DNA of 64,000 nucleotides from positions 1-64,000 of IMG/VR virus record IMGVR_UViG_3300009514_000001, one strand, 5' to 3'. Of this stretch, positions 5,450 to 60,748 are shown in pieces. The first letter of the stretch is position 1. Every line of letters begins with the position of its first letter. A program made the position numbers and the translations under genes. Below the pieces are notes generated by a model. That model had not been told where the DNA came from. It saw nothing but the letters and a program-made list of their open reading frames with translations, and made no database searches.

Positions 5450-5827
5450 AGATCCACGGCGACCAGATCAGGTACTGGTCTGTGTTCGATCAAATGCCGG
5501 AGATACTTCGAGGACTTTTATTCTGGCGCGGATGCTGATGATTAGAGCTTTCTGAGCGTCCTGGTCGACGTATCCGAGATGGTCCGAGAGGCCGGAATCA
5601 CGTTCCCTACGGCCATGATGGCCCGAGAGGCCGGAATCACGTTCCCTACGGCCATCACACGCCGCCTGTAGGGACGAAAGGTAAACACGGCGAGGATCTG
5701 ACTGAAACCAACCAACCACTGGGGTGATGTCTTCTGGGGTGTCTGCAAGGGAGTGGGCCAGAACAAGCTGGGCCACATTTTGATGCAGGTGCGCCAGGAG
5801 CTACGCTCCCAACTCCAACAGGAGTGA
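5446..5827 (+). pseudogene. Decayed NADAR (YbiA-like) gene
   Basis: Fragments FLS..GITFPTA and ETN-HWGDVFWGVCKGVGQNKLGHILMQVRQEL in broken frames, with duplications at ~5584-5655 and ~5707. Confidence 0.7.
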
Positions 5828-8064: not shown

Positions 8065-8196
8065 TGACGATGGCCCGCGGCGGCGGGCCGAAACGCCCTC
8101 ACGGGCGTCTGGGACGCAAACACCCACCCATGACGATGGCCCGCGGCGGCGGGCCGAAACGCCCTCACGGGCGTCTGGGACGCAAACACCCACCCA
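8065..8196 (+). repeat. Perfect 66-bp tandem duplication containing a hammerhead-like fold
   Basis: 8065-8130 equals 8131-8196; contains UGACGA, the stem GGCCCGC/GCGGGCC, GAAAC, CGCCC/GGGCG and UCUGGG as at 3766. Confidence 0.8.
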
Positions 8197-33225: not shown

Positions 33226-33265
33226 CAGGGTGGAAGCAAACCACCCTTGTCGAGAGGACAAACCG

Positions 33266-35011
33266 ATGGCCAAGGCCGACAAACTCAAGCGAAAGCTCCT
33301 CCCCCCCAACCACACTGCTGCCGACTTCCAGTACAGGGGTCGGCCATCGACTGATGTGGGCGACTTCGGCGAGGACGTGGGTATCGCTGACGGAGCTTGC
33401 GTCAACCAGTTCGGCGATGACGGCTCCGACAAGGGCCGCAACAACTGCAAGTACTACCACGGCGGCGTCGTCCAGAGTACCAAGGACAACTCCTGGTGGT
33501 GCTACTTCCAGTACGGACGCATCGACGACAGTGGCGAAAGCTGGACGGCCCCCTACTCGAACCCGGCGAAGGGTGGCGACTTCCGCGGCGGAGACTTCCA
33601 GTTCTACGGATGCGAGAGCGAGGCCCACGCGCGCAAAGAGTTCGCCGCCCAGATGAGGAAGAAGTCCACGAACCGCCTGGAGAGGAAAGACCTCGGCGGT
33701 GGCGTGAAGGTCTGGGTCTCGAAGACCGACAAGAACGGCAAGAGCAAGGATGGCTACATCATCCAGGCCTTGGCCACACGGACCCGAGGCCTCCCCGACG
33801 CCTACACCATCAAGGACGACACCGGAGTCACCATCAAGGACGACACCGGAGTCGCCGAGGCGAAGGCGAAGCCCAAGAAGAAGACCAAGCGAGCGTCTTC
33901 GGCCCCCAAGGTCCACCCCCAGGTCGTCAAGCTCGCCCAAGACCTCGTGGGTGGTACCAAGACCTTCGCCCGGGCTGCCGCGGCGGCCACGGGTGTCACG
34001 CCCACCCTGGCGGCCATCACCGAGGCTCGCGACGTCATCATCCCCCAGGCGCTCCAGCTCCTCGCCAAGATCGGAGATGACCTCGACGCCCAGCTCAACG
34101 ACAAGAACCTCCAAGGACTGTCCCGCTACATGGCCGGGCGCATCCCCGTCATCATCCCTCGTGGAGCCACTCAAGAGGACCGGGCCAAGATGCTGCTCCT
34201 CTCCAAAGACACCATCATGGAGCGCCAGCAGGACCTCGACGCGTTCGAGGCCGCCCTCAAGTCTGAGGACTTCGAGACCGAAGGGGACTCCCCGGTCGTC
34301 GACTACAACGCCATGCTCGGCGCCCTGGTCGACTGGATTGACCCCCAGAGCGAGTTGGGAAGGTGGTTGGAACCCACATTCCGGGCGATGTCGAACAATC
34401 GTCACTACAACAGTAGGGGACGTCTGGTCATCAAGAACATGTTCAAGGTGGTTCGGCCGGACAGGGACGCCCTTTTCGTGGCTGCGACCAAGAAAGTCGC
34501 TGCCAAATGTCGGGGAAGAGTCGACCTCAAGGCGCGTCTCCAGCCACCAGCCAGGCCCGATGTGTCGGACATCTCGGACGAATACGACCAGGCCAACGTG
34601 TTCCTGGGCATCCACGGAACCCGGGCTGTGAACATCCACCCCATCATGTCGACGAACCTGAGACTTCCAAAGTCTCTCAGAGGAGTCGTAATCACCGGCA
34701 GTGCCTTCGGATCGGGTATTTACGCAGCTTCCGACTGGAAAAAAAGCTATAATTATTGTGGGCTTAGCAGCTCCTACTACGGGGGTGGAGGTACGATTTC
34801 GGGCCGCGGGTTCTTCATGTTCCTCCAGGACATCATCATGGGCCAGGCATACAAGGCCCGATCCGTGGGTTCTTGGCAGACTCCTCCCAACGGGTGTGAC
34901 TCCATCGCGGCCTACCCGGACTTCATGAGGACGCTTCAGAACGACGAGCACATCATCTTCGACCCGTCGTATCAGCGTATCCGATACCTCATCGAAGGGG
35001 AGATTCACTAG
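33266..35011 (+). CDS. PARP-like ADP-ribosyltransferase with WGR and helical regulatory domains
   Basis: YFQYGRI (WGR-like), helical middle, IHGT, GSAFGSGIYAAS..KKS.NY, FMFL.D...G and LQNDEHIIFD..Q.IRYL (H-Y-E triad). Confidence 0.85.
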   Translation: MAKADKLKRKLLPPNHTAADFQYRGRPSTDVGDFGEDVGIADGACVNQFGDDGSDKGRNNCKYYHGGVVQSTKDNSWWCYFQYGRIDDSGESWTAPYSNPAKGGDFRGGDFQFYGCESEAHARKEFAAQMRKKSTNRLERKDLGGGVKVWVSKTDKNGKSKDGYIIQALATRTRGLPDAYTIKDDTGVTIKDDTGVAEAKAKPKKKTKRASSAPKVHPQVVKLAQDLVGGTKTFARAAAAATGVTPTLAAITEARDVIIPQALQLLAKIGDDLDAQLNDKNLQGLSRYMAGRIPVIIPRGATQEDRAKMLLLSKDTIMERQQDLDAFEAALKSEDFETEGDSPVVDYNAMLGALVDWIDPQSELGRWLEPTFRAMSNNRHYNSRGRLVIKNMFKVVRPDRDALFVAATKKVAAKCRGRVDLKARLQPPARPDVSDISDEYDQANVFLGIHGTRAVNIHPIMSTNLRLPKSLRGVVITGSAFGSGIYAASDWKKSYNYCGLSSSYYGGGGTISGRGFFMFLQDIIMGQAYKARSVGSWQTPPNGCDSIAAYPDFMRTLQNDEHIIFDPSYQRIRYLIEGEIH

Positions 35012-37886: not shown

Positions 37887-37936
37887 CCAGCCCTCCTCAA
37901 GTCTCTACAGAGTACCAGGCGATAGAGAGACAAGTG

Positions 37937-37965
37937 GGTCCACTTTCGGACCCGGTGTCGTATGG
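37937..37965 (+). promoter_or_regulatory. Putative phage promoter GGTCC-N18-GTATGG in front of the cas operon
   Basis: Exact spacing, 23 nt before the GTG start at 37988. Confidence 0.6.
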
Positions 37966-37987
37966 AGGGCTACGAGGTGAGGAAAGA

Positions 37988-39985
37988 GTGAGAGACATCT
38001 ACGCCAGGCCGGGACAGCTTCTTTACGACCACCTGCTGGGTGTCTGTCGAAAAGCTCTCCCAAAGGCAGCTCGACTCAATCTTGAAAAGCCCCTGTTTGA
38101 CCTGATTGTGAGCCACGATTTAGGTAAGGCTTCATTTCTCTGGCAGCAAGGATTGCAGAGAGGAGACAGACCCCTGCCTGACCACGTCTCCGCAGGGGCT
38201 AAGGTACTTCTCGACAGAGGGAGTCCGCTATTCCTGTTGTCGCATAGCCACCATGGTAGTCTAGGCAGTCTCGCGGCTTGTCGCCCCCAAGTAGGGGAGT
38301 TCTCAGTACCCGAAGAAGTTCTGATTTGGCTCTCTGATAACGCACCGAGGCTGGCTAGTGAAGTCCACCAAGAGCTGGGCCTGGGTGTTGAGTTCGGCAG
38401 GGAGAACAACCCCTGGTGGCTGGAAGACACCCCAGAACAGGTCTCTCTTCGTCTACGGCTCCTCTTCTCCCTTCTTGGAGACATGGACATCCAAGATGCT
38501 AGGGAGTTCGACACAGGAGAACGCCAGAATCATCACGGAGTGCAGGAGCTTCACCAGAGGTTCTTGGAGTGGGTCGACAACAGTCCCTCAACTGTCGTCT
38601 CCGAAGCCCTAGCGTTCGCCCGGCACCCCCCCGGTAGGTACCGCATCACATCCCCCCACCCCATCGGCAAGACGACTGCGGGGCTGGGATACGGACTGGC
38701 CCATGCGAGGGCGCACGACCTGGACAGGGTCGTTCTGGTCGCCCCCTACCTTTCCCACCTACACCATCTGGAGGAGCGTCTCACAGACCTCTTCGGAGAG
38801 CGACTGGTCTCTAGTTCAGTTCTCCAGCACCACACCGGGATAGCCACTTCCGAGTTGTCTCCTTGGGCCAAGCCGCTCATCCTGACTACCTCGGCCCAGT
38901 TCTGGGGGACCCTCAACCATCACCATAAGATGGCCCTCCGCAACGTCCACTATCTCTCCCACAGTGTCGTCATCCTCGACGAGAACCAGGCTCTCACCTC
39001 TCGCCTTCACGACCACTATGAAAGCACCCTGAACCTGATGCGGGATGAGTGGGGGTGTTCGATTGTGCAGACAGGACAAACTATCCGTGCCCGCTCAAGA
39101 GAGATGCCAGCCCGCCTGTCGTCTTCCTCAGGGACAGATAATCGGTCGTCCACCCTACTAGGGGAGGTGGAGTGGTCTGCTGTTGCCTCACGGGCTAGTG
39201 AGTCGACCAGAGCAATGGTTGTCACCAACACCATCGCCGATGCTCTGGAGGTGGCCAGCCACATGCCGGAGGGAACTGTGTGCCTGACCAGTCGCCTCTG
39301 CTCGCGAGACCGACAGGACATTGGACACCGCCTCCGCCTCCGAACACAAGAGGGCCCCCTGAGAGTGGTTGCGACTCCCCTGACGGAGACAGACACCGGG
39401 ATGCTCTTCGGTCTCGTGTTGAGGGCCATGTGTGGAGCGGGGTCCCTGCTCCTTTCACGGGCACACCTCCTCCCCGGAGGGGAGATGGGCATCTTCACCT
39501 CGACACCCCCAAGGGCGGCTGGTCGGGATGCCGCTATTACCCAGAGGCTTCTCCAAGACCCCTGGCAGCTCACAGACTCGGACTGGCTGGCCGAGTACTA
39601 CGACCAAGTCTTAGCGACAGGAACCGTCAGCTCCGACCTCGTCAGAGCGGCCCATGAACTCGACTTCAGAGGAGCATCCAGAGCCTTCAGGCTCATCTCA
39701 GATAACAAGACCAACATCCTGCTCGTGAGACACCCCAACGTTGACATCCAAGATGAGATTGACTCCGTATTGGGAGGCCTGAGGTCCCCCTCACCAAGGA
39801 TACGGCGAAAAGCGCGTCGAGACGCCCTGAGATACTCCGTGCCCCTTTCTGAGTATGAGTTGAACTCTGCTAGGAACCAGGGCCTTATCGGAACCCTCGC
39901 CACACATCTGGAATGTGACCTCGAAACACCCATCTGGCTAGGGGGCTACGACGACACAAGTGGAGGACTTCGTTTTTTCTCTTGA
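37988..39985 (+). CDS. cas3: Type I-C Cas3: intact HD domain, degenerate SF2 helicase
   Basis: DHL, SHDLGKA, DHVSAG and SHHG (HD); SPHPIGKTT, ILDENQ, VTNT, ATPLTETDTG and SLLLSRAHL (eroded helicase motifs). Confidence 0.88.
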   Translation: MRDIYARPGQLLYDHLLGVCRKALPKAARLNLEKPLFDLIVSHDLGKASFLWQQGLQRGDRPLPDHVSAGAKVLLDRGSPLFLLSHSHHGSLGSLAACRPQVGEFSVPEEVLIWLSDNAPRLASEVHQELGLGVEFGRENNPWWLEDTPEQVSLRLRLLFSLLGDMDIQDAREFDTGERQNHHGVQELHQRFLEWVDNSPSTVVSEALAFARHPPGRYRITSPHPIGKTTAGLGYGLAHARAHDLDRVVLVAPYLSHLHHLEERLTDLFGERLVSSSVLQHHTGIATSELSPWAKPLILTTSAQFWGTLNHHHKMALRNVHYLSHSVVILDENQALTSRLHDHYESTLNLMRDEWGCSIVQTGQTIRARSREMPARLSSSSGTDNRSSTLLGEVEWSAVASRASESTRAMVVTNTIADALEVASHMPEGTVCLTSRLCSRDRQDIGHRLRLRTQEGPLRVVATPLTETDTGMLFGLVLRAMCGAGSLLLSRAHLLPGGEMGIFTSTPPRAAGRDAAITQRLLQDPWQLTDSDWLAEYYDQVLATGTVSSDLVRAAHELDFRGASRAFRLISDNKTNILLVRHPNVDIQDEIDSVLGGLRSPSPRIRRKARRDALRYSVPLSEYELNSARNQGLIGTLATHLECDLETPIWLGGYDDTSGGLRFFS

Positions 39986-40079
39986 CGAGAGTCAGAGAAA
40001 GCCCTTGCCTTTCCGACCACGGGAACACCCGGGGAACTATTAACAACACAATGTGGTTGAGGCGAAAATTGAGGCGAAA

Positions 40080-40754
40080 ATGAACCTGAGAAAACTACTC
40101 AGCGACCCTGTGAGGGTCAAGGTCACAGGCAGAAGAGGCCTCTTTTCGCGCCATGACTTTCCTACGGAGAGGATTTCATACCCTATCATGACCCCCAGTG
40201 CCGCCCGGGGGCTGCTCAGAAGGATATACGGAAAACCTCAGCATTTCTGGGTGATACAGGCGGTTCAGGTGCTGAATCCAATTCGGTTCGAGAACATCAC
40301 CTACAACGAGGTGAGACTCCCGAAGAGACCTGTTCCTGTGAATGTTAGCAATACATCTCAGGTCCGTATTCAGAGGTCTGCCCAGGTTCTCATAGAGCCC
40401 TCCTACATCATCGAGGCACGGGTTCTGGTGCATCCCTATGCGTACAGGAACGGAGGCATGCCCACCAAGCACACGGAACAGCTCAAGAGACGTCTGAAGA
40501 GGGGCCAGTTCTTCCTCCAACCCGATCTCGGCAAGAGCGAGTTTTTCGCTGATTGTTCTTTGCCGGACGGCAGCGAGAGTCCCCTTCCAGTGAGCCAGGA
40601 CCTCGGCCGTATCCCTCTCTTCGTCGATCAGAGCGAAGGGCGCTCGCACTACTTCCAGGCCTTCATGAAGCGGGGTGTGGTGCAGGTGCCGCAGAAGCAG
40701 CTTCTGGACGTCCTGGAGCCGAAACTCCTCGACCAAGACCCTTGGAGAACGTGA
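40080..40754 (+). CDS. cas5: Type I-C Cas5 (Cas5d, crRNA-processing)
   Basis: ERISYPIMTPSAARG.L..IYGKP..W.I..V.VLNPIRF..I..NEV; TKH..Q..RR..RGQ.F.QP.LG..EF. Confidence 0.92.
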   Translation: MNLRKLLSDPVRVKVTGRRGLFSRHDFPTERISYPIMTPSAARGLLRRIYGKPQHFWVIQAVQVLNPIRFENITYNEVRLPKRPVPVNVSNTSQVRIQRSAQVLIEPSYIIEARVLVHPYAYRNGGMPTKHTEQLKRRLKRGQFFLQPDLGKSEFFADCSLPDGSESPLPVSQDLGRIPLFVDQSEGRSHYFQAFMKRGVVQVPQKQLLDVLEPKLLDQDPWRT

Positions 40755-42655
40755 TGTACAATCTCATCCGAGAACTCACCAAAGTACGGGTGCCCTCGAC
40801 GTTCCCGGGCCCTGGGTATCTCCTCAGAACTGCCAACGTGTTCTGTCACCTAGACAGATCGGGATTCTCTCACTGGGAGGTCAAGAAAGAGGGTGAGCTT
40901 TACATGCTCCCCGACTCTGGACGTACAGGGACGGGTACAAAGGTCGGCCTGTGGGGTGACCAGGTGAGGGTCTACACCGGGAACAAGGAGACCAAGAAGG
41001 CCCGGGCCAAGAGAGAGGCCGCGAACAAGGCGAAGGGGAGAGACAACTCCAACGACTTGGCGGTTGCAATGGCCAAAGCTGTGAGCGAGGCCCACAATCG
41101 CATCAAGGGCCGCGCCGGAGAGGACACCAGGCTGAGTCTCGTCTACACATTTCTCACGGACGAGAGTCAGCGTCAGCGGGCTTACGATGCCCTTCCGGAT
41201 GACGTGAACCCGAACAGTCCTGTCGTCCTTGTTGTCGAGGGGAGGACGATGGTCCGTCCCCAGGAAGGTCCCTGGGCATCTCCGAACATCGACCTCTACG
41301 AGGAAGAGGGCAAACGCATTGCCTGGGTAGGCAATCTCAAGACCGTCGAGGGGGTGTGTAGCGTCACAGGCGAAAAGGACCTCATCCCCGACATCCACCC
41401 TGGGTCCGTGAAGATTGGTGACTCCAGAGCCCAGCTACTTTCCGGAAACATCCCCCAACACTTCCCCAATCCCAAAGGCAAGCTGTGGAGCACTGGCATC
41501 GGCCTGGAGGCTGCCCAGCAGTACACGACCGCCCTTGACTACCTGACGACGGACAAGAACCACCACCTGACGGCCCTCCACACCACGACCAAGAACCCCT
41601 CCTCCAGCGACTTCCAGAAGATAGTCTGGTGGGGCCGGGACGAGGACGCCTCCCTTCCTATCTACCAGAGCATTATCCGCCCCTCTGCGGAAGTCCGCAC
41701 GGCTATCGAGGAAGCCCTTGAGGGGAGGGGAGGTCCGGTCAACCTCGAACACCCCTTCAACACACTCGTCCTAGGTACCCACGTCAGACGCCTGGTGGTG
41801 CTCAGCATGTCGAGCGATACCCTCCTGGGTGTCTACCAGAGTGCCAGTCGATGGCTGAGAATGACCGAGACTCTCAGCGTTGATGAAAGGGGCGCCCTTG
41901 CCCGGAAAAACCACTCTCTCAAGGCCCTGTCGAGGGCCCTTCTGCCCCGCTCAAAGGAGGGTGAGTGGTTCGGTAAGTGCTCTCCCTACACGACGCAGGA
42001 CATCCTGAGGTCCATGCTCTTTCGGGAGCCCCTCACCAAGAGGCTCATCCACGGCCTGATGACTCGTCTCGAACGTGACCAACAGCTAACCACCGCCCGC
42101 ACAGCCCTCTTGCAGGTCTACCTACACCAACGAGGAATCATGGCTGACAAGACCCAAGCCCGAACCCCCATCGACCCGGAACTGGGAGGGTACGTCGGAT
42201 ACAATCTCGGACGTCTCCTCCAAGAGGCGACGGCCATCCAAAAGGCGGCAATCCGAGTCAATCGGGACTTGAGTTCCACCCTCTCATCCTACGCCAAGAA
42301 CCACCCCCGACGGCTGTACGACAAAACCACTCAGAAGGCGGACAATCACTTGACCTCTCTCAGGACCAAAGGGGACTACGGACTGGCCTCAATGTTCGAG
42401 AAGCGCCTGGGGGCCATCATCGGACGCATCTCTATGGTGCCGAAACAACTTCCCGAGGAGCAACTCGCACTGTTTCGCAAGGGACTGCGGGATCAGTATC
42501 TGGCCTCCCAGGCCGCCAACAAAAGACGATCTCAACTTAACAACGAGGACATCGCCAAGGACGAACTCGCATACCAGAAAGCGCAGGTCGACCTGACTCT
42601 AGGTCTCATTGACCCGGAGGACTGCCCTGCACCACCCACCACCGACAAGGAGTGA
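40754..42655 (+). CDS. cas8c: Type I-C Cas8c large subunit
   Basis: CSVTGEK...HP, AAQQYTTALDYL and C-terminal GYNLGRL..Q..A; TGATG coupling to cas5. Confidence 0.82.
   Translation: MYNLIRELTKVRVPSTFPGPGYLLRTANVFCHLDRSGFSHWEVKKEGELYMLPDSGRTGTGTKVGLWGDQVRVYTGNKETKKARAKREAANKAKGRDNSNDLAVAMAKAVSEAHNRIKGRAGEDTRLSLVYTFLTDESQRQRAYDALPDDVNPNSPVVLVVEGRTMVRPQEGPWASPNIDLYEEEGKRIAWVGNLKTVEGVCSVTGEKDLIPDIHPGSVKIGDSRAQLLSGNIPQHFPNPKGKLWSTGIGLEAAQQYTTALDYLTTDKNHHLTALHTTTKNPSSSDFQKIVWWGRDEDASLPIYQSIIRPSAEVRTAIEEALEGRGGPVNLEHPFNTLVLGTHVRRLVVLSMSSDTLLGVYQSASRWLRMTETLSVDERGALARKNHSLKALSRALLPRSKEGEWFGKCSPYTTQDILRSMLFREPLTKRLIHGLMTRLERDQQLTTARTALLQVYLHQRGIMADKTQARTPIDPELGGYVGYNLGRLLQEATAIQKAAIRVNRDLSSTLSSYAKNHPRRLYDKTTQKADNHLTSLRTKGDYGLASMFEKRLGAIIGRISMVPKQLPEEQLALFRKGLRDQYLASQAANKRRSQLNNEDIAKDELAYQKAQVDLTLGLIDPEDCPAPPTTDKE
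42140..42655 (+). CDS. cas11: Cas11c small subunit from an internal in-frame start in cas8c
   Basis: GAGG-AATC-ATG in frame, just before the Y.LGRL C-terminal domain. Confidence 0.6.
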   Translation: MADKTQARTPIDPELGGYVGYNLGRLLQEATAIQKAAIRVNRDLSSTLSSYAKNHPRRLYDKTTQKADNHLTSLRTKGDYGLASMFEKRLGAIIGRISMVPKQLPEEQLALFRKGLRDQYLASQAANKRRSQLNNEDIAKDELAYQKAQVDLTLGLIDPEDCPAPPTTDKE

Positions 42656-42659
42656 AAGA

Positions 42660-43613
42660 ATGGACGTCAAGTGTATCAACCCAAAGACCCGCCACGATTT
42701 GCTAATCACCTTCAGCGTCACCCGAGGCAACCCCAACGGAGATCCGGATGCCGGAGGAGCGCCCCGAGAAACCCAGGATGGCTATGGCATCGTCACCGGT
42801 GAGAGCATCAAGCGCTTGGTACGGGATGCCGCGGAAGAGGTCTTCGAACAGAAGATTTACATCCGGTCCGGACCGCCCCTAGAGGAGGCTCTGTTGAAGG
42901 CCGTCGAGCGAGCCTACAACGGAGACTCCTCCGAAGCTCCCCGTGACAAGAAAGGCAACCTCCTGGTGGCCCAGGTACCAAAGGACAAAATCCAGGCCAT
43001 CCTCGACGAACTGAGATCGTACTTCGACAACCGCATGTTCGGAGCCGTTTTCGCCAGTCAGAAAGTCCCTGTCGGACGATTCCGAGGACCCGTAGCTATC
43101 GGAGATGCCCGGTCCTTCGATGAGATCGTAGTCCGAGAAAATCGCCTCACTCGGGTCGTCTCCGCCAAGTCCGATGAGGGCAAGGACCGAACCGGCCAGG
43201 GCACCTTCGCGGAGCGCTACGCCGTCGACTTCGGCTTCTACGAAAGCTTCGGCAGCTTCAGCCCCCACGGCTCTGGCAAGCACGTCTCCGAGGAGGACCT
43301 CAAGGTGCTCTTCCAGTCTCTCGTCACGGGGTTCCAAGAAAGCGCCTCCGCCCGTCGTGGGGGCTCCTACCAGGTTCACCGCATCTACGTGTTCACGCAC
43401 GACAACGCCCTGGGTAACGCCTCCCAGCACGATCTCCGCAAAGTCGTCAAGGTGACCAAGCGGAAAGACGTGGATAGTCCCCTCTCCCTCGACGACTACC
43501 TCGTCGAAGTGAACCGAGGTGCCATCCCCAAAGGAGTTCACCTGAGCATCATCGACAACAGCAACGTCCTGGACCCGCAGGCCTGGTACGTCGACAGCTC
43601 CCGTCCTCGATAG
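42660..43613 (+). CDS. cas7: Type I-C Cas7 (Csd2)
   Basis: GNPNGDPDAGG.PR, G.VT.ESIKR.VRD, FDNRMFGAVF, RGPV and HDNALGNA. Confidence 0.95.
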   Translation: MDVKCINPKTRHDLLITFSVTRGNPNGDPDAGGAPRETQDGYGIVTGESIKRLVRDAAEEVFEQKIYIRSGPPLEEALLKAVERAYNGDSSEAPRDKKGNLLVAQVPKDKIQAILDELRSYFDNRMFGAVFASQKVPVGRFRGPVAIGDARSFDEIVVRENRLTRVVSAKSDEGKDRTGQGTFAERYAVDFGFYESFGSFSPHGSGKHVSEEDLKVLFQSLVTGFQESASARRGGSYQVHRIYVFTHDNALGNASQHDLRKVVKVTKRKDVDSPLSLDDYLVEVNRGAIPKGVHLSIIDNSNVLDPQAWYVDSSRPR

Positions 43614-43789
43614 TACCCGTTCGAACACCCCAGTGATGAGGAGACCCCTAGGGGTGCTCGAACGATAATGAAATCAATAGGTTGGATGCACTTTTGAGAG
43701 CCTCCCATCTTGTTCTTTGATAAGTGAATTAGGGGTGCTCGAAAACAGTACTCCAACTACCTAAGAACACTAGCTTTTGGGCTAGTGCG
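43614..43789 (+). promoter_or_regulatory. CRISPR leader
   Basis: AT-richer region with CGTTCGAACACCCC/GGGGTGCTCGAACG inverted repeat and a second AGGGGTGCTCGAA. Confidence 0.7.
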
Positions 43790-45473
43790 GTCGTCTTCTC
43801 GAAAGAGGAGACGGGAGATTTCAACGTGAGAAAGCTGAGGAGGTTCTGGAAGCATGGAGCGTCGTCTTCTCGAAAGAGGAGACGGGAGATTTCAACGAGG
43901 TGGGCGTAGACTCCGGGGGACTCGCCTTCAGTCGTCTTCTCGAAAGAGGAGACGGGAGATTTCAACGAGTTCGATGGGGACCGGCTTAAAGGAATCCTGA
44001 GCAGGTCGTCTTCTCGAAAGAGGAGACGGGAGATTTCAACGCCGAGAAGTACCCGGTGTAGTCGTAGCCATGGAACAGTCGTCTTCTCGAAAGAGGAGAC
44101 GGGAGATTTCAACGAGTGTGTAGTGGGCTGCCCCGCTACGGATTACGGGTCGTCTTCTCGAAAGAGGAGACGGGAGATTTCAACGATGATGCCTGCGGTG
44201 ATGTAGGGGCCGTCTTTCCGGGTCGTCTTCTCGAAAGAGGAGACGGGAGATTTCAACCTAGGATAGGGAAACGGGTTCAGCCGAAGACGCACGTCGTCTT
44301 CTCGAAAGAGGAGACGGGAGATTTCAACGTTGAAGAGAAGACCAGGAGAGACAGAGAGGCCACGTCGTCTTCTCGAAAGAGGAGACGGGAGATTTCAACA
44401 ACGTCGACACCAGTCTCTTCTCGCCCTTCTTGAGAGGTCGTCTTCTCGAAAGAGGAGACGGGAGATTTCAACTGATTCTGTCGGACACGACTGTCCTCGA
44501 CGCACTGAGTCGTCTTCTCGAAAGAGGAGACGGGAGATTTCAACGTCTTCAGGAGAGCTGGAGCCGACCCCACCCGACCCCACCTGAGCCCGTCGTCTTC
44601 TCGAAAGAGGAGACGGGAGATTTCAACATGGTCAGGGTCTCGACGGGGAGGTGATACGAGGGCGGTCGTCTTCTCGAAAGAGGAGACGGGAGATTTCAAC
44701 CCGAAGAGATCGTCGGAGGCGAATCCGCCACCCACGAGTCGTCTTCTCGAAAGAGGAAGATTTCAACTATCCGAGGTTAGAACAGGACAGTGAAGGTGTC
44801 GCCTGAGAGCTGAACTCGTGTCGTCTTCTCGAAAGAGGAGACGGGAGATTTCAACAGGGCCTGGCTACCCCCAGGAGACTTCTGGGCGGGCGTCGTCTTC
44901 TCGAAAGAGGAGACGGGAGATTTCAACTCACTCTCGTGGTCCACATCCAACCTCGGGGCTCCTGTCGTCTTCTCGAAAGAGGAGACGGGAGATTTCAACG
45001 ATGAAGAGCCGAAGCCGCGCCAGCGCCCGAGAAGCGCGTCGTCTTCTCGAAAGAGGAGACGGGAGATTTCAACGGAGGGACAGCGTGTTTCTTCTTCGGC
45101 TTGGCTTCCTGTCGTCTTCTCGAAAGAGGAGACGGGAGATTTCAACCGGAGCAGATGCTACGCAGGGCGGAGACTGCCCGCGGTCGTCTTCTCGAAAGAG
45201 GAGACGGGAGATTTCAACGGACTACGAGCGCCGCTATCCTGGCACCACGCACCCCGTCGTCTTCTCGAAAGAGGAGACGGGAGATTTCAACAGGTGCGGT
45301 CGTCTTCTCGAAAGAGGAGACGGGAGATTTCAACAAAGACAGGGACACGGTCGTTCACACCTGGTGTCGTCTTCTCGAAAGAGGAGACGGGAGATTTCAA
45401 CGGCAATGTCGCCCGCTGTTAGCCCCCAGCGCAGCCAGTCGTCTTCTCGAAAGAGGAGACGGGAGATCCGGGG
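43790..45473 (+). CRISPR. Type I-C array: 24 repeats GTCGTCTTCTCGAAAGAGGAGACGGGAGATTTCAAC (36 bp), 23 spacers, mostly 34-38 bp
   Basis: Counted by hand; 9-bp stem with GAAA loop and a G-U pair supports the + strand; the last repeat (45438) is degenerate. Confidence 0.97.
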
Positions 45474-47290: not shown

Positions 47291-47483
47291 TGTCAGAGAC
47301 CATCGAAACCGGAACCGTCTTCACCCCCGGCAGCTCCAGCAACCTAGCCTTCGGAAACGGTCAGTGCATCTGCTCGGCCGGAGGATATCGGAACCGCTAA
47401 ACCAGTTCCAACTCTACTCTAGGACCCTTGGGAAACCGTTTTACCGGTCCCTGAGCGTCTGTTTTCTGATCTCAGGAGACTCC

Positions 47484-48371
47484 GTGTCATCAGTACGCAT
47501 TCCCGAACCCCACGAAATCGACCTCGTTCTCTACCACGCCGGCTGCACAGACGGCTTCACAGCAGCCTGGGCAGCCTGGGAGGTCCTCGGCGACAAGGCC
47601 GAGTACATCCACGTCCAGTACGGGTCCGACCCGCCAGACGTCGAGGGACGCAAGGTCGCCGTCGTCGACTTCAGCTACCCCCGGGAGCAGCTCCAGGAGA
47701 TGGCCTCGAAGGCAGAGGCCCTCGTCGTCCTGGACCACCACAAGACGGCGGAAGCTCAGCTCCACGGCCTCGACTACGCCCGGTTCGACATGGACAAGTC
47801 CGGCGCTGTCCTCTCCTGGGAGTTCTTCCACCCCGGCAAGACGGTTCCTCCGGGTGTCCTCTACGTCCAGGACCAAGACCTCTGGCAGTGGGAGATGGCT
47901 GACTCCAAGGAGTTCTCGGCCGGCCTCGGCCTCCGGGAGTTCGAGTTCGAGGTGTGGCGAAAGGTCATGTATGACTCCTGGGAGGTCACCGACGAGGGGG
48001 TCATCATCCTCAAGTACGTCGACAACCAGGCCTCCCGCCTGGCGAAGAAGGCGGTCTTGGTCGAGATCAACGGACAGCGGATGTGGATGGTCAACGCCAC
48101 CAACCACGCCAGCGAGATTGGCCATCTCCTGTGTGCTCGCGAGGATGACGTCGGGGTCGCAATGATTTGGTTCTACGAGGCCCAGAAGAGTAGGGCACGG
48201 GTGTGCTCTCTTCGGTCTCGCAAGGGCGGGGTTGATGTGGGTGCCTTCGCGGCCTCGTTCCGCAAAGACAACCCGGAGAAGGTACTCTCGGGGGGTGGTC
48301 ACCAGGCAGCCGCAGGGTTCGTCTGGAAAGGTCCTATCGAGGACCTGGTCACCTTCATTGATGACGAGTGA
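47484..48371 (+). CDS. DHH/DHHA1 phosphoesterase (NrnB-like)
   Basis: YHAGCTDG, VVDFSY, LDHHKT, DQDLW, SLRS and GGGHQAAAGF. Confidence 0.9.
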   Translation: MSSVRIPEPHEIDLVLYHAGCTDGFTAAWAAWEVLGDKAEYIHVQYGSDPPDVEGRKVAVVDFSYPREQLQEMASKAEALVVLDHHKTAEAQLHGLDYARFDMDKSGAVLSWEFFHPGKTVPPGVLYVQDQDLWQWEMADSKEFSAGLGLREFEFEVWRKVMYDSWEVTDEGVIILKYVDNQASRLAKKAVLVEINGQRMWMVNATNHASEIGHLLCAREDDVGVAMIWFYEAQKSRARVCSLRSRKGGVDVGAFAASFRKDNPEKVLSGGGHQAAAGFVWKGPIEDLVTFIDDE

Positions 48372-48378
48372 GCGAACG

Positions 48379-49580
48379 ATGGACAGGCTGCACCACTACG
48401 GACGAGATGACTCCGGGGCTCTCTACGAGCTGGCGGTAATCTCTCGTCGTAGGGGTGACCGGGCGCCTTGGGGCGTCGCTGTCAGCCGTCTCGTCGTTCT
48501 TGAGCAGTGGAATCTGCTCGCCGATGCCTTTTTGGGGAGTCCACTTCCCTGGCTCCGGTCGTATTATCCAGTAACAGGGCGCTGTGCCTCCTCATGGAAA
48601 GTGGCAGCACGGTGCCTCCGGGCCCTAGAAGGCCCGGACTGGTGGCTCTGGCTCCAACAGCATTCACTGGACTCTTGCGTCGCCGGTATCCTACATGGCG
48701 ACGACCGGGACCTCAGCGAGGCTGTCAGGGCCGACTGGAACCGGCTTCTTGCCGAAGGCGTCAGCCAAAGGATTCTCGCCAAGGGCAAGAGAGGACCGGT
48801 TCTCTGGGTTCGAGTCCCAGTTCCTTCACTGGACACGAGGATGCGATGAAACACGTTCTGCCCGAAGACACGACCGAGAAAGAGTTCCCCCGCCAGTTGG
48901 CCGCCATCCTGGCGAAAGCCTCGGACGGTGACGAGATCGAGCTGCCGACCAATGAGCTGTGCCAGGTGGCCGCCGAGACCCTCAGGGAGGACTACCCCAA
49001 CAAGCAGAATATCCGCCTGATCAGCCAAGAACCAATTCCCGTGTTCCAAGCCCCGGGCGGCGGACCCATGGTGCTCATCGGACCACCGCCGTGGCTCCAG
49101 GGAGAGGGAGACAACGACACTCCCCTGGCCGGCTCACCTCTCAGAGACTACGACGCCTGGATTCAAAAGCTCCAGGAGGACGGCCGGGTCCCAAGCGAAG
49201 AGGACGTCCAGGAGTGGCGGGAAAGGGAGGCGAGCATCCGAGGCCACGAGACCTGGATGGCCGGCTGGTTCGACAGCATGATTCACGGGTTCATCATGGC
49301 GGGCAGGGAGGAAGGGACCAACGAGTTCCTCGACCGAACCCGCGTCCTTGTCCACCAGAGCGCCCTCGTTGTAGGACACCTGATGGAACTGGCTCGCCAG
49401 GCTGCCAACCGGGAGGAAGGAAAGGGACCCGAAGTCCTTCAGGAGCTTCGGGACCTGATGCGCGACGGTATCCGTTCGGGCATCTCGGACACCTCCAACT
49501 GCCAGTGCCCGAGCTGCGTTCAGCGACGCGAGGAAGAAGCCCGCGCCGCCGAAGCCGCTCTGGATGAGGATGGGGATTGA
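48379..49580 (+). CDS. Two hypothetical ORFs (48379-48849, 48846-49580)
   Basis: ATGA coupling. Confidence 0.55.
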
Positions 49581-49589
49581 CAGGTTGTC

Positions 49590-49734
49590 GCAGAGTCCGC
49601 GCGAGCGGAGATGAGCCCGACCCCTGCTGCGGGACCGGTGGGATGCTCGCGCCTACCCCACATGCGTGGGGATGAGCCCGTACCCTGGTCTGATGCGAAG
49701 CCCGAGTCCGCTCCGCACACGCGGAGATGATCCC
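49590..49734 (+). CRISPR. Degenerate type I-E-like mini-array: 3 repeats of 29 bp, spacers of 32 and 26 bp
   Basis: Repeats at 49590-49618, 49651-49679 and 49706-49734, each 5 nt + 6-bp stem + 4-nt loop + stem + ATGA(G/T)CCC. Confidence 0.65.
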
Positions 49735-49737
49735 CTC

Positions 49738-50766
49738 CTAGAGGTCGCCGAAGATTTGGCCCCACCAGGGAGCGATATCCCACTTGGTCTTCACCACATG
49801 GTGGTGGCCGATGACACCGCGGAACGTGCTGGCTCCGCCTTTGCCCGTGAGAGCCTCACGGGGGATGACCCCGTGGTAGGGCTCGCCCGTCTCCTCCAGG
49901 CCGTCCTTGCCCCTGGGGATGCGGAACGGGATGCCGAGCGCGGCACAGAGGTCCTCTGTCAGCTCCCTGGCCGCCTTGGCCAGTCGGGGCTCCAGGGTGA
50001 CGATCTTGTCTCGACCCCGAGGATTGGGGTTGTCGACCAGCTCGACGTTCCACCCCTTCTTCTTGAGCTTCTTGAGCCACTTCTCCGTCGGCTGCTGACA
50101 GATGTCCAGACCGACGGACCGGCTGTTGGCCCCCGCCGCGTGCCAGGCCCGGTGGATGGTGTCTAGGAACTGGTAGAAGTAGACCTGGTCCTCCGCGACC
50201 TGCAAGTCCAGGCCGCCGTGGGAGGACACGTTGCGCTTGTCCGAGACGATGTTGCCCTTCTTGTCGAACTTGGCGTTCTCGAAGACGTTGAACAGGGACT
50301 GGGCTGAAAAGGCGCCCCAGTGCCAGACGATGTAGTCGATGCCCTGACCCAGCTTACGGCCCTCGTTGTAGTCCTTCTCCCGGTGCAGGTCGAGGCCGCC
50401 CCCATCATTGAAGTTGATGAACTGGTAGCTGCGGCCCTCGGGAAGGGCGATCTCCTGTCCGTCGTGAATCAGACGGTTCACCCACGGACCCACTTGTTTG
50501 AGGTGGTCGCCGTAGTTGTCCTTGATGGCCCTCCAGGTCCCGTTACCGAGTTTGCCGTCCCAGTCCTCCTCGTCCTCGAACACGGCCCTCTGGATGTCGT
50601 GGACGGCCTCGGCGAACGCGAGACTACTCGGGTCCTGGGCAAGGTCTGGAAAGGCCTCCAGAGCCGCAAGGGGCATCTTGTCGTAGAAGTTCAGCTTGGC
50701 TTCGGCGCGCTCGTTGAAGTCGGCGGCCTTCTTCGGGTCGTACCCGAATTCCATCAGGTCACTCAT
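49738..50766 (-). CDS. N-acetylmuramoyl-L-alanine amidase (endolysin-like) with a PG-binding motif
   Basis: DGKLGNGTW, IVWHW, VSSH, RAWHA..AN.RSVGLDI and GHHHV..TKWD. Confidence 0.8.
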   Translation of the reverse strand: MSDLMEFGYDPKKAADFNERAEAKLNFYDKMPLAALEAFPDLAQDPSSLAFAEAVHDIQRAVFEDEEDWDGKLGNGTWRAIKDNYGDHLKQVGPWVNRLIHDGQEIALPEGRSYQFINFNDGGGLDLHREKDYNEGRKLGQGIDYIVWHWGAFSAQSLFNVFENAKFDKKGNIVSDKRNVSSHGGLDLQVAEDQVYFYQFLDTIHRAWHAAGANSRSVGLDICQQPTEKWLKKLKKKGWNVELVDNPNPRGRDKIVTLEPRLAKAARELTEDLCAALGIPFRIPRGKDGLEETGEPYHGVIPREALTGKGGASTFRGVIGHHHVVKTKWDIAPWWGQIFGDL

Positions 50767-58217: not shown

Positions 58218-58958
58218 ATGACGAACGCCAACAGTACCCTCACAGCCGCCGCTCTTTCTGATGCAGACAACGATGCGCTCACCCGCATCATCACGCGCAA
58301 GAAAGGCATCTCCCGAGGCAAGGGAAACAACCGCAAAGTCTACGGAGACGACCTGGTCGAAGTCCTCGTGGTGACCGGCTTCGACTATCACGAGGTCGTC
58401 GAGCGCTCCTGGCAGGAGCTGAAGAACCTCGACATCAACGACGTCGTTGGAGAGCTTTCCGGACGTCTCGACGGCGAAGGCAACCCCATCACCCGAGACG
58501 ACATCGGCGCCGCGATGAAGGAGCTGCAAGCCAGCTTCTCGGCCAGCCTCGACGGCCGCAACCACGCCTCGACAGAGGGTAACTTCGAGACCCTGGAGGT
58601 CGACGGACAGAAGGTTCGAACAGTCAAGGTCTACAAGGGCCCGAAGACGGGGCAGAAGCGGGCCACCGAGGGTCTGGCACCGGGGACCATCTACATCCAC
58701 GGCCTCAAACTCTCAGAGAAGGTCCTGGAGCCAGCAGCCAATGGGCCCAAGCCCAAGAGCAATTCCTCGGCGAAAACCATCGCCAAGCGGTTCGTTCGTG
58801 GTAAGCTCTCGGTGGGTTCCTACGTGAGCTACGAGCTGCCTCCCGAAGGCAAGCCGTTCATCGTTCGTCCAGGAGGGACGACCCCGTTCCATTCGGACGG
58901 CAGTCGCATCCGGTTCCGCAACGCCACCGTCGAAACCCTCTTCGGTATTGCAGGGTGA
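58218..58958 (+). CDS. Hypothetical protein
   Basis: 246-aa ORF with AGGAG RBS. Confidence 0.7.
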   Translation: MTNANSTLTAAALSDADNDALTRIITRKKGISRGKGNNRKVYGDDLVEVLVVTGFDYHEVVERSWQELKNLDINDVVGELSGRLDGEGNPITRDDIGAAMKELQASFSASLDGRNHASTEGNFETLEVDGQKVRTVKVYKGPKTGQKRATEGLAPGTIYIHGLKLSEKVLEPAANGPKPKSNSSAKTIAKRFVRGKLSVGSYVSYELPPEGKPFIVRPGGTTPFHSDGSRIRFRNATVETLFGIAG

Positions 58959-58959
58959 G

Positions 58960-58988
58960 TACGACCCCGCATGAGCGGGGATGTTCCC
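58960..58988 (+). repeat. Solitary type I-E-like CRISPR repeat unit
   Basis: TACGA-CCCCGC-ATGA-GCGGGG-ATGTTCCC has the 5+6+4+6+8 layout of I-E repeats. Confidence 0.55.
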
Positions 58989-58999
58989 AAACGGGAACA

Positions 59000-59089
59000 G
59001 GTCATTGACCGCTATTGACCTCCTCCGCGAGCACGGAGATTCCCGGTCATTGACCGCTATTGACCTCCTCCGCGAGCACGGAGATTCCC
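59000..59089 (+). repeat. Perfect 45-bp tandem duplication
   Basis: 59000-59044 equals 59045-59089. Confidence 0.9.
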
Positions 59090-59099
59090 AAAGGAGCAC

Positions 59100-59633
59100 A
59101 TGACAGACACCATTCTTTTCCAAAATCGCTGGGTCAAGGTCATCGACCGTGACGGCTACACCATGGTCCACGGGGCCGGGAATGCCGTCGCGGTTCTCCC
59201 CTTTCGAGGGGCGGTCGGCCAAGCCACAACCGCTGACGTGGAGTTCCTGGCTCGCATCGAGCCCTGTCCTCCCCACGGACCGAAGCCCCACCTCTGTGGC
59301 ATTACGGGGGGCATCGAGGGCCGGGAGAAGCCGGTCGACGCTGCGGTGAGGGAGACCTTCGAGGAGTCTGGGTTCCGGGTCACCAGGGAACAACTGGTTC
59401 GCCTGGGCATGGTATGGCCGAGCAAGATGTCGACCACCATCATGCACCTGTTCGCCGTCGATGTGTCCAGCGTCCCCTGGGAGACTCCCCCGGGGGACGG
59501 GACCGTCTACGAGGCCCAGTCGATGACTGTGTGGCTCCCTTACGAGAAGTCCGCCCTGGTCCCAGACGCAGTCTACTGCTCGATGATGCTACGCCTGGGA
59601 CGGTTCTTCCGTGAGGGCCTCTGGGGCGGGTGA
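59100..59633 (+). CDS. Nudix hydrolase (ADP-ribose pyrophosphatase-like)
   Basis: Nudix box GGIEGREKPVDAAVRETFEESGF; N-terminal AVAVLP. Confidence 0.88.
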   Translation: MTDTILFQNRWVKVIDRDGYTMVHGAGNAVAVLPFRGAVGQATTADVEFLARIEPCPPHGPKPHLCGITGGIEGREKPVDAAVRETFEESGFRVTREQLVRLGMVWPSKMSTTIMHLFAVDVSSVPWETPPGDGTVYEAQSMTVWLPYEKSALVPDAVYCSMMLRLGRFFREGLWGG

Positions 59634-60526: not shown

Positions 60527-60555
60527 CGAAACTCAGACCCTTGTTGGCCCCCAAC

Positions 60556-60748
60556 GGGAGGGGGTCCGGGCGCTCCGGAGCCCGACGTAGACGAGAGTTC
60601 AGCGCGGCCGTCACTGGGTCCGGGCGCTCCGGAGCCCGACGTAGACGAGAGTTCAGCGCGGCCGTCACTGCGGCCGTCACTGGGTCCGGGCGCTCCGGAG
60701 CCCGACGTAGACGAGAGTTCAGCGCGGCCGTCACTGCGGCCGTCACTG
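60556..60748. repeat. Compound tandem repeat (GGTCCGGGCGCTCCGGAGCCCGACGTAGACGAGAGTTCAGCGCGGCCGTCACT x3 with sub-duplications); related single copy at ~62836-62905
   Basis: Read directly from the sequence. Confidence 0.85.

What the first reader, a model, noticed from the sequence alone, without database searches (positions are those of the whole stretch)
49590..49734. Orphan type I-E-like mini-array made of three different repeat variants
Seen: GCAGA-GTCCGC-GCGA-GCGGAG-ATGAGCCC, GCCTA-CCCCAC-ATGC-GTGGGG-ATGAGCCC and GTCCG-CTCCGC-ACAC-GCGGAG-ATGATCCC, separated by 32 and 26 bp, filling the gap between convergent genes. Stems vary with compensation while the 8-nt 3' handle is kept; the 5' ends are degraded. 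The repeats are unrelated to the I-C repeat and no I-E cas gene is in the window. Established: this is the I-E repeat layout, 32 bp is the I-E spacer length, and viruses use mini-arrays and repeat-like RNA anti-CRISPRs. Inference: RNAs that load onto and redirect or jam the host I-E Cascade, so the phage would exploit two CRISPR types.
Basis: partly seen in the sequence, partly recalled or inferred. Interest (0 to 1): 0.72.

Follow-up and report, generated by a model that had tools for sequence, protein, structure and literature searches.

The report
Phage-borne type I-E CRISPR repeat mimics
A 222-kb phage that carries its own type I-C CRISPR system also holds, between two converging genes, a 145-bp string of three different look-alikes of type I-E CRISPR repeats, most likely small RNAs that occupy or redirect the host's I-E machinery, a kind of phage trick already described in other phages.

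Summary
Three 29-nt units lie at 49590-49618, 49651-49679 and 49706-49734 on the + strand, 32 and 26 bp apart. They fill the gap between a 244-aa gene and a convergent amidase/endolysin gene. Each has a 5-6 bp GC stem, a 4-nt loop and the tail ATGAKCCC.

A pattern derived from them retrieves genuine 61-nt-periodic I-E arrays in many bacterial genomes. The 3' 24 nt of unit 3 (stem, loop, handle) match one repeat of a MAG's array exactly and its other repeats over 23 nt; that MAG has a complete I-E operon. In the 222-kb phage only four sites come this close to real I-E repeats. The fourth is at 58960-58988.

The phage has no Cas6e or Cas7e, but has Cas3c-Cas5c-Cas8c-Cas7c plus a 23-24-repeat array. 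A related phage contig has the two flanking genes abutting, so the element is a lineage-specific insertion.

Not shown: expression, the host, any spacer target, any processing.

Best reading (about 0.5): a viral crRNA-like mini-array (Racr, Cracr-array or mini-array kind) acting on host I-E Cascade. The main rival is a decaying captured array fragment. It is a new member of a known kind, of moderate interest.

The parts
49590..49618 (+). psiR1: I-E-like repeat. 5-bp stem TCCGC/GCGGA (outermost pair G.G broken), loop GCGA, handle ATGAGCCC.
   Evidence: (6 mismatches to a real array repeat). In the MFE fold its hairpin is outcompeted by pairing with the 3' end of spacer 1.
49619..49650 (+). psiS1: spacer-like, 32 nt (the canonical I-E length).
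   Evidence: No match in the phage's own genome, IMG/VR, GenBank phages, sampled I-E host loci or related-phage loci.
49651..49679 (+). psiR2: I-E-like repeat. 6-bp stem CCCCAC/GTGGGG, loop ATGC, handle ATGAGCCC.
   Evidence: 6 mismatches. The hairpin is present in both the MFE and the centroid fold.
49680..49705 (+). psiS2: spacer-like, 26 nt (32 minus 6, i.e. one Cas7 step shorter).
   Evidence: No match found. E. coli Cascade accepts spacers longer than 20 nt for interference (PMC5159557).
49706..49734 (+). psiR3: the most canonical unit. 5' GTCCG, stem CTCCGC/GCGGAG, loop ACAC, handle ATGATCCC.
   Evidence: 4 mismatches to the array repeat of a Brevibacterium MAG. Its 3' 24 nt match one repeat of the array in L079 (genome G001) exactly, and two further repeats of that array over 23 nt. 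G001 has a full I-E operon.
48846..49580 (+). Upstream 244-aa gene of unknown function. Its stop lies 9 nt before psiR1, so the mini-array sits in its 3' flank in the sense orientation.
   Evidence: called product P0121, 244 aa. No Pfam or PHROG family (10, 83). Homologue in L164 at 53% identity. The start coordinate is computed from the 244-aa length.
49738..50766 (-). Convergent Amidase_2 / endolysin-like gene.
   Evidence: 78% identical to L164:1984-2994 (41).
58960..58988 (+). psiR4: solitary I-E-like repeat starting 2 nt after the stop of gene 58218-58958. Stem CCCCGC/GCGGGG, loop ATGA, handle ATGTTCCC. The handle also pairs with GGGAAC downstream.
   Evidence: 5 mismatches; fold z = -3.9.
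59000..59089 (+). Two exact 45-bp tandem units. Each ends in a degenerate I-E-like hairpin (CTCCG, 6-nt loop, CGGAG) with a handle shortened by 2 nt (ATTCCC). They lie directly upstream of the RBS and ATG of a NUDIX gene (59100-59633).
   Evidence: D6; gapped alignment to R1-R4. The assignment as I-E-derived is tentative.
37934..45473 (+). Context: the phage's own type I-C module. Cas3c 37934-39985, Cas5c 40053-40754, Cas8c 40553-42655, Cas7c 42609-43613, A/T-rich leader, and an array of 23-24 repeats of 36 nt at about 43790-45473.
   Evidence: No Cas1 was found in the genome.

Best explanation
The element is a virus-borne, cas-less mini-array of three type I-E CRISPR repeat mimics (psiR1-psiS1-psiR2-psiS2-psiR3). 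It was inserted between two convergent genes of a 222-kb phage with direct terminal repeats.

Proposed mechanism (inferred): it is transcribed on the + strand, by read-through from the 244-aa gene or from an unrecognised promoter. The host's Cas6e binds the hairpins and cuts at the 3' base of each stem. That would give a 61-nt and a 55-nt crRNA-like RNA, each with an 8-nt ATGAGCCC 5' handle and a 21-nt 3' hairpin, plus a hairpin-less tail RNA. These RNAs load host Cas6e, Cas7e and Cascade.

The benefit to the phage would be anti-CRISPR: competition with, or sequestration of, Cas proteins (Racr-like), and/or re-aiming Cascade at a host sequence such as a cas promoter (Cracr-like). The different stems may fit different Cas6e/repeat variants. 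A second locus (psiR4 plus two degenerate units, 58960-59089) would add to the dose.

Shown: the sequence and structural identity with I-E repeats, the orphan status, and the insertion status. Inferred: transcription, processing, loading and effect.
For: - The layout and sequence are those of I-E repeats. The derived pattern retrieves 61-nt-periodic arrays in at least 120 genome contigs, mostly Actinomycetota.
- The stem, loop and handle of psiR3 equal the repeat of an array in genome G001. The main array of G001 follows Cas3-Cse1-Cse2-Cas7e-Cas5e-Cas6e in the same orientation.
- Only four such sites exist in 222 kb, all on the + strand and each directly after a + strand stop codon.
- The conservation pattern fits selection on Cas binding. 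Handles are 8/8, 8/8 and 7/8, and stems are kept through two double changes. Loops and 5' ends are free: 11-12 of 21 positions are identical between units, by my own count. By contrast, the degenerate terminal repeat of the natural array in L079 has changes within the palindromic core.
- The spacings are 32 and 26 nt. The second is the canonical length minus one 6-nt Cas7 step, a length that still works in E. coli Cascade (PMC5159557).
- The element is accessory. In relative L164 (amidase 78% identical) the two genes overlap by 4 bp with nothing between them. In the more distant L165 the site holds a plain A/T-rich hairpin.
- Precedent exists. Solitary I-E repeat units are common in IMG/VR contigs. 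RacrIE1 and RacrIE2 inhibit I-E (PMC10651486). Twenty viral I-E Cracr arrays with 2-3 spacers and degenerate repeats have been described.
Against: - There is no expression or processing evidence; no sequencing runs were listed.
- No sigma-70-like promoter was found in or just before the element. The scan has no power in this phage, though.
- The host is unknown. None of the 175 spacers of the best-matching I-E genome G001 hits the phage, and G001 lacks the phage's TnpB.
- No target was found for either spacer, including in the sampled I-E cas operons.
- The closing pair of psiR1 is broken and its hairpin is not in the MFE fold. The whole region folds no better than shuffles, z = -0.28.
- Full-length psiS1 (32 nt) is unlike the short 21-24 nt psiS of the published CracrIE array.
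Confidence: 0.5

Rival explanations
1. Guide mini-array for inter-element conflict. The two spacers are real guides that make the host's I-E Cascade-Cas3 destroy a competing phage or plasmid (superinfection exclusion). This is as proposed for virus-borne mini-CRISPR arrays (Faure et al. 2019 and Medvedeva et al. 2019, as cited in the preprint read).
For: psiS1 has the canonical 32 nt. psiS2, at 26 nt, is still within the range that supports interference in E. coli. psiR2 and psiR3 have intact hairpins, so at least the psiS2 RNA would be a complete crRNA. The phage already invests in CRISPR warfare with its own I-C module and 23 spacers.
Against: No protospacer was found in 2.9 million IMG/VR contigs (exact, with every 6th base free), in 50,697 GenBank phages, or in the related-phage loci. 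The repeats are only about 66% alike, unlike the small arrays of near-identical repeats seen in other viral contigs. There is no adaptation module to renew the spacers.
Confidence: 0.15
2. Decaying relic. A fragment of a host I-E array (or several fragments) was captured by illegitimate recombination and now drifts. At most it serves as a set of GC hairpins that stop or stabilise the two convergent transcripts.
For: The element is absent from relatives and sits in a dispensable intergenic site. The repeats are strongly diverged. psiR1 has a broken pair, psiS2 has an odd length, and the second locus contains clearly degenerate copies with indels. There is no detectable promoter, target or host link. 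The distant relative L165 has an ordinary hairpin at the same place, so a hairpin may be all that is needed here.
Against: Neutral decay from one captured array should break stems and erode the handle at the same rate as the rest. Instead 23 of 24 stem cells pair, there are two compensated changes, and the handle is nearly invariant while about 45% of the other positions differ. Four units in two loci all have the sense orientation after a stop codon. The 5-6 bp stems lack a U-tract, so they are poor intrinsic terminators.
Confidence: 0.3
3. Not CRISPR-related at all: REP-like palindromes or terminators that resemble I-E repeats by chance.
For: GC-rich short palindromes are common in 60% GC DNA. 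Rfam gives no CRISPR-DR match.
Against: The hairpin-plus-handle motif is confined to these two loci in 222 kb, so it is not a dispersed REP family. There is a 24-nt exact identity to a real I-E array repeat, and the pattern retrieves real arrays. Shuffled genomes never come as close.
Confidence: 0.03

Closest known systems
Viral I-E 'Cracr arrays' (crRNA-like regulatory RNAs of phages; Liu et al., bioRxiv 10.1101/2024.10.29.618823; example: the CracrIE array of a Salmonella enterica Se29 prophage)
   Same: A cas-less array in a phage of 2-3 spacer-like segments between degenerate I-E repeat-like units. One unit is imperfect. The 8-nt 5' handle is kept. The units within one array differ from each other.
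   Different: The published psiS are 21-24 nt and were found through their match to host CreR or the casA promoter. Here psiS1 is 32 nt and psiS2 is 26 nt, and no such match could be tested because the host is unknown. The carrier here is a 222-kb DTR phage with its own I-C system, not a prophage.
RNA anti-CRISPRs (Racr; Camara-Wilpert et al., Nature 2023, PMC10651486), including RacrIE1/RacrIE2
   Same: Repeat mimics in viral intergenic DNA, similar in sequence and hairpin to the host's repeat and without cognate cas genes. The proposed action is sequestration of Cas6 and Cas7.
   Different: Racrs are solitary repeat units, usually with a promoter within 250 bp upstream. Here there are three units with crRNA-like spacing and no predicted promoter. 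psiR4 at 58960 is closer to the solitary form.
Virus-borne mini-CRISPR arrays used in inter-viral conflict (Medvedeva et al. 2019; Faure et al. 2019; cited and from general knowledge)
   Same: A short array with 1-2 spacers on a virus that relies on the host's Cas proteins.
   Different: Those arrays have near-identical repeats and spacers that match related viruses. Here the repeats are about 66% alike and no target was found.
Canonical type I-E CRISPR array (e.g. G001:C53, downstream of cas3-cse1-cse2-cas7e-cas5e-cas6e)
   Same: 29-nt unit, 6-bp GC stem, tetraloop, ATGAKCC(C) handle, 61-nt period for unit 1, same polarity.
   Different: There is no leader, no adjacent cas genes, only three units, heterogeneous repeats, and one 26-nt spacer.

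Membership tests
Type I-E CRISPR repeat (sequence/structure class) | 29-nt unit with a 6-7 bp GC stem, a 4-nt loop and an 8-nt 3' handle, found in 61-nt arrays next to I-E cas genes | tested here: met
   The pattern from the units retrieves 61-nt arrays. The psiR3 core is identical to a repeat of genome G001, which has the full I-E operon. Hamming distances are 4-6 against a shuffle floor of 7-8.
Bona fide CRISPR array | Near-identical direct repeats | tested here: not met
   Pairwise identity is about 66% (19/29). Only 13 of 29 columns are invariant over R1-R4.
Bona fide CRISPR array | Regular spacing with unique spacers of the subtype's length | tested here: inconclusive
   The periods are 61 and 55 nt. 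The spacers are unique and not significantly alike. One spacer is 6 nt short.
Bona fide CRISPR array | Leader and cognate cas genes in the same genome | tested here: not met
   No Cas6e or Cas7e in the 222 kb. The element starts 9 nt after a stop codon, with no A/T-rich leader.
Racr / solitary repeat unit | Repeat mimic on a virus or plasmid, outside any CRISPR-Cas locus of that type | tested here: met
   The record is a virus with direct terminal repeats. Its only cas genes are type I-C, 4 kb away, with an unrelated 36-nt repeat.
Racr / solitary repeat unit | Own promoter within about 250 bp; expressed as a small RNA | tested here: inconclusive
   The only sigma-70-like site is weak, at 49270-49297 inside the upstream gene. 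Such scans are at chance level in this phage. No RNA data were available.
Racr / solitary repeat unit | Binds Cas6/Cas7 and inhibits interference | not testable with these tools
   This needs the host or a reconstituted I-E system.
Viral Cracr array | psiR-psiS-psiR architecture with degenerate repeats on a mobile element | tested here: met
   compared with the description.
Viral Cracr array | psiS with at least 9 PAM-proximal matches to a host CreR/CreA RNA or a cas/toxin promoter | tested here: inconclusive
   The best matches in 0.89 Mb of sampled I-E loci, including the G001 cas operon, are 12-13 nt at E >= 0.15. The true host was not identified.
Viral Cracr array | Shortened psiS that allows binding without cleavage | tested here: inconclusive
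   psiS2 is 26 nt and psiS1 is 32 nt. The published examples are 21-24 nt.
Intrinsic terminator / REP element | Stem followed by a U-tract, or a dispersed multi-copy palindrome family | tested here: not met
   No terminator-like site in 49581-49737. The motif occurs at only two loci in the genome.

The most novel reading that the evidence does not exclude
The phage fights on two CRISPR fronts. It uses its own complete I-C interference module (Cas3c-Cas5c-Cas8c-Cas7c with 23 spacers) as a weapon. It also deploys a multi-specific decoy/regulator array whose three or four differently stemmed I-E repeat mimics are each tuned to a different Cas6e/repeat variant in its host range. That would neutralise or reprogram several hosts' I-E systems from the 3' UTRs of ordinary genes, without a dedicated promoter.
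Probability: 0.2. Interest if true: 0.6.

Novelty: new member of a known kind. Interest (0 to 1): 0.45.

Why it matters
If functional, this is an I-E crRNA-mimic array in a large environmental phage that also carries its own type I-C CRISPR-Cas. None of the examples in the papers read here combines the two. It would show one genome combining offensive CRISPR use with RNA mimicry of a second, host-encoded CRISPR type.

The heterogeneous but structurally compensated repeats would be a natural data set on what Cas6e and Cascade need to see in a repeat. Practically, the repeat sequences give a handle for predicting the host: an organism with an I-E system whose repeat ends in GGAGATGAKCC(C). The class itself is already published (Racr, Cracr arrays, viral mini-arrays), so the gain is incremental.

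Tried and rejected
- Rfam, at gathering and at E-value thresholds: no CRISPR-DR or other family at either locus.
- Genome-wide REP hypothesis: rejected, the motif is confined to two loci.
- Self-targeting: the spacers have no second copy in the phage.
- Protospacer searches gave only chance-level hits. Searched: IMG/VR with every 6th base free, GenBank phages, 120 sampled I-E genome loci plus the G001 cas operon, and related-phage loci.
- Shared seed idea. psiS1 and psiS2 share 7 of their first 10 nt (post hoc P about 0.008). The spacers are not alike overall (592 of 2000 shuffles score as well). The handle-plus-seed pattern finds only 4 coding-sequence chance hits in IMG/VR. Dropped.
- Host identification failed on every route:
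  - No relatives are drawn for a virus record.
  - No close phage in GenBank or IMG/VR.
  - TnpB homologues lie on other phage-like contigs.
  - Cluster names and the protein atlas gave no taxon.
  - G001 (best repeat match) has no spacer against the phage.
  - G001 and its 20 relatives have no copy of the phage's I-C repeat.
  - G001 has no homologue of the phage's TnpB.
- The phage's I-C spacers against sampled host loci and its own genome: nothing significant.
- Expression: no sequencing run was listed for either query.
- ATTGACM as a possible phage promoter motif before psiR1 and in the 45-bp tandem: its occurrences are scattered through coding DNA, so there is no support.
- One mis-specified and one over-long pattern call gave nothing.

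Full report
**What is there**

The window is the first 64 kb of a single-contig, 222,005-bp virus record. It has direct terminal repeats, 60% GC and no tRNA genes.

- There are three 29-nt units: psiR1 at 49590-49618, psiR2 at 49651-49679 and psiR3 at 49706-49734.
- They are separated by 32 nt and 26 nt.
- Each unit has a variable 5-nt head, a 5-6 bp GC stem, a 4-nt loop and the tail ATGAGCCC, ATGAGCCC or ATGATCCC.
- The element fills the 157-bp gap between the stop of a + strand gene and the stop of a convergent Amidase_2/endolysin-like gene (49738-50766).
- The + strand gene's called product is 244 aa, which puts the gene at about 48846-49580.

**Is it more than chance, and is it type I-E?**

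A degenerate pattern built only from the stems and handle of the units was searched in one genome per prokaryotic species.
- Most multi-hit contigs showed the pattern at a 61-nt period, i.e. CRISPR arrays. They are mainly from Actinomycetota, with some Myxococcota, Chlorobiota, Bacillota and others.

One of these genomes, G001, is a 5.4-Mb MAG labelled 'uncultured bacterium'.
- Its small array in locus L079 has one repeat identical to psiR3 over 24 nt (stem, loop and handle) and two more identical over 23 nt.
- Its main array has more than 170 repeats with the same stem and the loop ATGC. It follows an A/T-rich leader and a complete cas3-cse1-cse2-cas7e-cas5e-cas6e operon, in the same polarity as the phage units.

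I then scanned every 29-mer of the phage, on both strands, against 54 consensus repeats of the retrieved arrays.
- Only four sites lie within 6 mismatches: psiR1 (6), psiR2 (6), psiR3 (4) and a fourth unit at 58960-58988 (5).
- The next best sites have 8 mismatches, and five Markov shuffles never went below 7.
- Caveat: the references were fished with a pattern taken from psiR2/psiR3. The scan is therefore fully independent only for psiR1 and psiR4.
- A perfect-hairpin-plus-handle scan finds the motif at the same places only. It is not a dispersed REP family.
- Rfam reports nothing.

**Pattern of conservation**

- Between units, the 21 nt before the handle are only 11-12/21 identical, while the handle is 8/8 and 7/8 (my own count).
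- Over psiR1-4, 23 of 24 stem cells pair.
- Two stem positions change on both sides: C-G to U-A in two units, and G-C to A-U in one.
- Only the outermost pair of psiR1 is broken.
- This is what selection on a hairpin plus a protein-bound handle would give. It is also what separate capture from different I-E arrays would give. It is not what neutral decay of one captured array would give.
- With four sequences the statistics are weak: 17 of 500 shuffles reach the observed covariation score.

**Context**

The phage has no Cas6e or Cas7e anywhere.

It does encode a complete type I-C interference module about 4 kb upstream.
- The genes are Cas3c (37934-39985; PADLOC E = 4.7e-72), Cas5c, Cas8c and Cas7c.
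- They are followed by a leader and an array of 23-24 unrelated 36-nt repeats.
- No Cas1 was found.

So 'orphan I-E-like units in a phage that has its own I-C system' is correct.

**The element is accessory**

- The only homologue of the 244-aa protein (53% identity) lies on a 4.6-kb contig, L164.
- In L164 that gene overlaps by 4 bp the convergent amidase gene, which is 78% identical to the window's. There is no intergenic DNA and no I-E-like unit.
- A more distant relative, L165, is a 261-kb contig with an amidase 56% identical. It has an ordinary A/T-rich hairpin after the amidase stop.
- The 157 bp are therefore a lineage-specific insertion at a permissive site.

**A second locus**

- psiR4 (58960-58988) starts 2 nt after the stop of gene 58218-58958.
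- It is followed by two exact 45-bp tandem units (59000-59089).
- Each tandem unit ends in a degenerate version of the hairpin with a handle shortened by 2 nt.
- The tandem lies immediately upstream of the RBS of a NUDIX gene.
- All I-E-like units are in the sense orientation of the gene they follow.

**What could not be shown**

- Expression: no public sequencing run was listed for the region, so there is no expression or processing evidence.
- Promoters and terminators: sigma-70 and terminator consensus scans find nothing in the element. They are at chance level throughout this phage, so they carry little weight.
- Folding: the 171-nt region folds no better than shuffles (z = -0.28). The psiR2 and psiR3 hairpins appear in both the MFE and centroid structures. 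The psiR1 hairpin is displaced by pairing with the end of psiS1.
- Targets: neither spacer matches the phage itself, IMG/VR, GenBank phages, the sampled I-E loci (including the G001 cas operon) or related-phage loci.
- Host: it remains unknown.
  - None of the 175 G001 spacers hits the phage.
  - G001 and its 20 relatives lack the phage's I-C repeat.
  - G001 lacks a homologue of the phage's TnpB.

**Mechanism**

Established knowledge of I-E systems: Cas6e binds the repeat hairpin and cuts at its 3' base. This leaves an 8-nt 5' handle on the downstream spacer and a 21-nt hairpin on the upstream one. Cas7e coats the spacer in 6-nt steps.

Applied to a + strand transcript of this element, processing would yield three products.
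- A canonical 61-nt RNA: handle, 32-nt psiS1, psiR2 hairpin.
- A 55-nt RNA: handle, 26-nt psiS2, psiR3 hairpin.
- A hairpin-less tail.

E. coli Cascade assembles on shortened spacers with fewer Cas7 subunits and still interferes when the spacer exceeds 20 nt (PMC5159557).

Three published modes fit such RNAs.
- Racr-type sequestration of Cas6 and Cas7; RacrIE1 and RacrIE2 inhibit an I-E system (PMC10651486).
- Cracr-type reprogramming of Cascade onto its own cas promoter, combined with competition with crRNAs. Twenty viral I-E Cracr arrays with 2-3 spacers and degenerate repeats are reported (bioRxiv 10.1101/2024.10.29.618823).
- Guide mini-arrays against competing elements.

I favour an anti-CRISPR role (decoy and/or regulator) at about 0.5, for two reasons. 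The repeats are heterogeneous, as in Cracr arrays. No competitor target exists in very large viral collections. I give the guide mini-array about 0.15, a decaying relic that at most acts as hairpins between convergent genes about 0.3, and a chance or REP-like origin about 0.03.

**Novelty and score**

The class is known. The following are unusual here.
- Three (or four) different, compensated stems.
- A full-length spacer next to one shortened by 6 nt.
- Placement directly behind stop codons.
- A carrier that is a 222-kb phage with its own I-C module.

Other IMG/VR contigs with I-E-like units show solitary units or small arrays of near-identical repeats. Verdict: a real feature, a new member of a known kind, function inferred, interest 0.45.

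Noticed in passing
window 58960-59089: A second I-E-like locus. A solitary repeat mimic lies right after a stop codon. Two exact 45-bp tandem units follow, each containing ATTGACC twice and a degenerate hairpin with a shortened handle, just upstream of a NUDIX gene. The region folds far better than shuffles (z = -3.9).
   Followed up: partly
window 37934-45473: The phage encodes a complete type I-C interference module (Cas3c, Cas5c, Cas8c, Cas7c) and an array of 23-24 repeats, but no Cas1 was found in the 222 kb. The array has irregular intervals: spacers of 47 and 7 nt, and a 119-nt interval that is only a repeat at 44735 missed by the spacer-extraction script. The last repeat is truncated. 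No spacer target was found.
   Followed up: partly
window 31111-32346 (and a second copy elsewhere in the genome, protein P0005): An IS605-type TnpB gene sits in a local GC dip (53% against 60%). A second copy, 81% identical, lies elsewhere in the phage. The closest homologues (73-84%) lie on other phage-like contigs, including 89-191 kb ones (L160, L161).
   Followed up: partly
window 33230-35011, 47364-48371, 59100-59633: There is a cluster of accessory enzymes around the CRISPR features: a WGR-PARP-like protein, a DHH/DHHA1 phosphoesterase (PHROG 4771) and a NUDIX hydrolase. These are possible nucleotide-signal or NAD-related counter-defence genes. They were not analysed further.
   Followed up: no
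window 5578-5655, 8065-8196, 20808-20987, 33805-33852, 60545-60730: Several exact or near-exact tandem duplications of 24-90 bp are scattered through the window. Whether they are genuine or assembly artefacts is not known.
   Followed up: no
window 49597-49606 with 49641-49650: The stem-loop region of psiR1 (GCGCGAGC) is complementary to the 3' end of psiS1 (GCTCGCGC). This alternative pairing replaces the psiR1 hairpin in the predicted MFE fold. It could modulate processing or be chance.
   Followed up: no
window 49619-49628 and 49680-49689: The two spacer-like segments begin alike (GACCCCTGCT and GTACCCTGGT, 7 of 10). The spacers are otherwise unrelated, and the motif is not shared with other viral I-E-like units.
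   Followed up: yes
whole genome G000: ARAGORN finds no tRNA gene in the 222-kb phage. CheckV completeness is given as 42 despite the direct terminal repeats.
   Followed up: no
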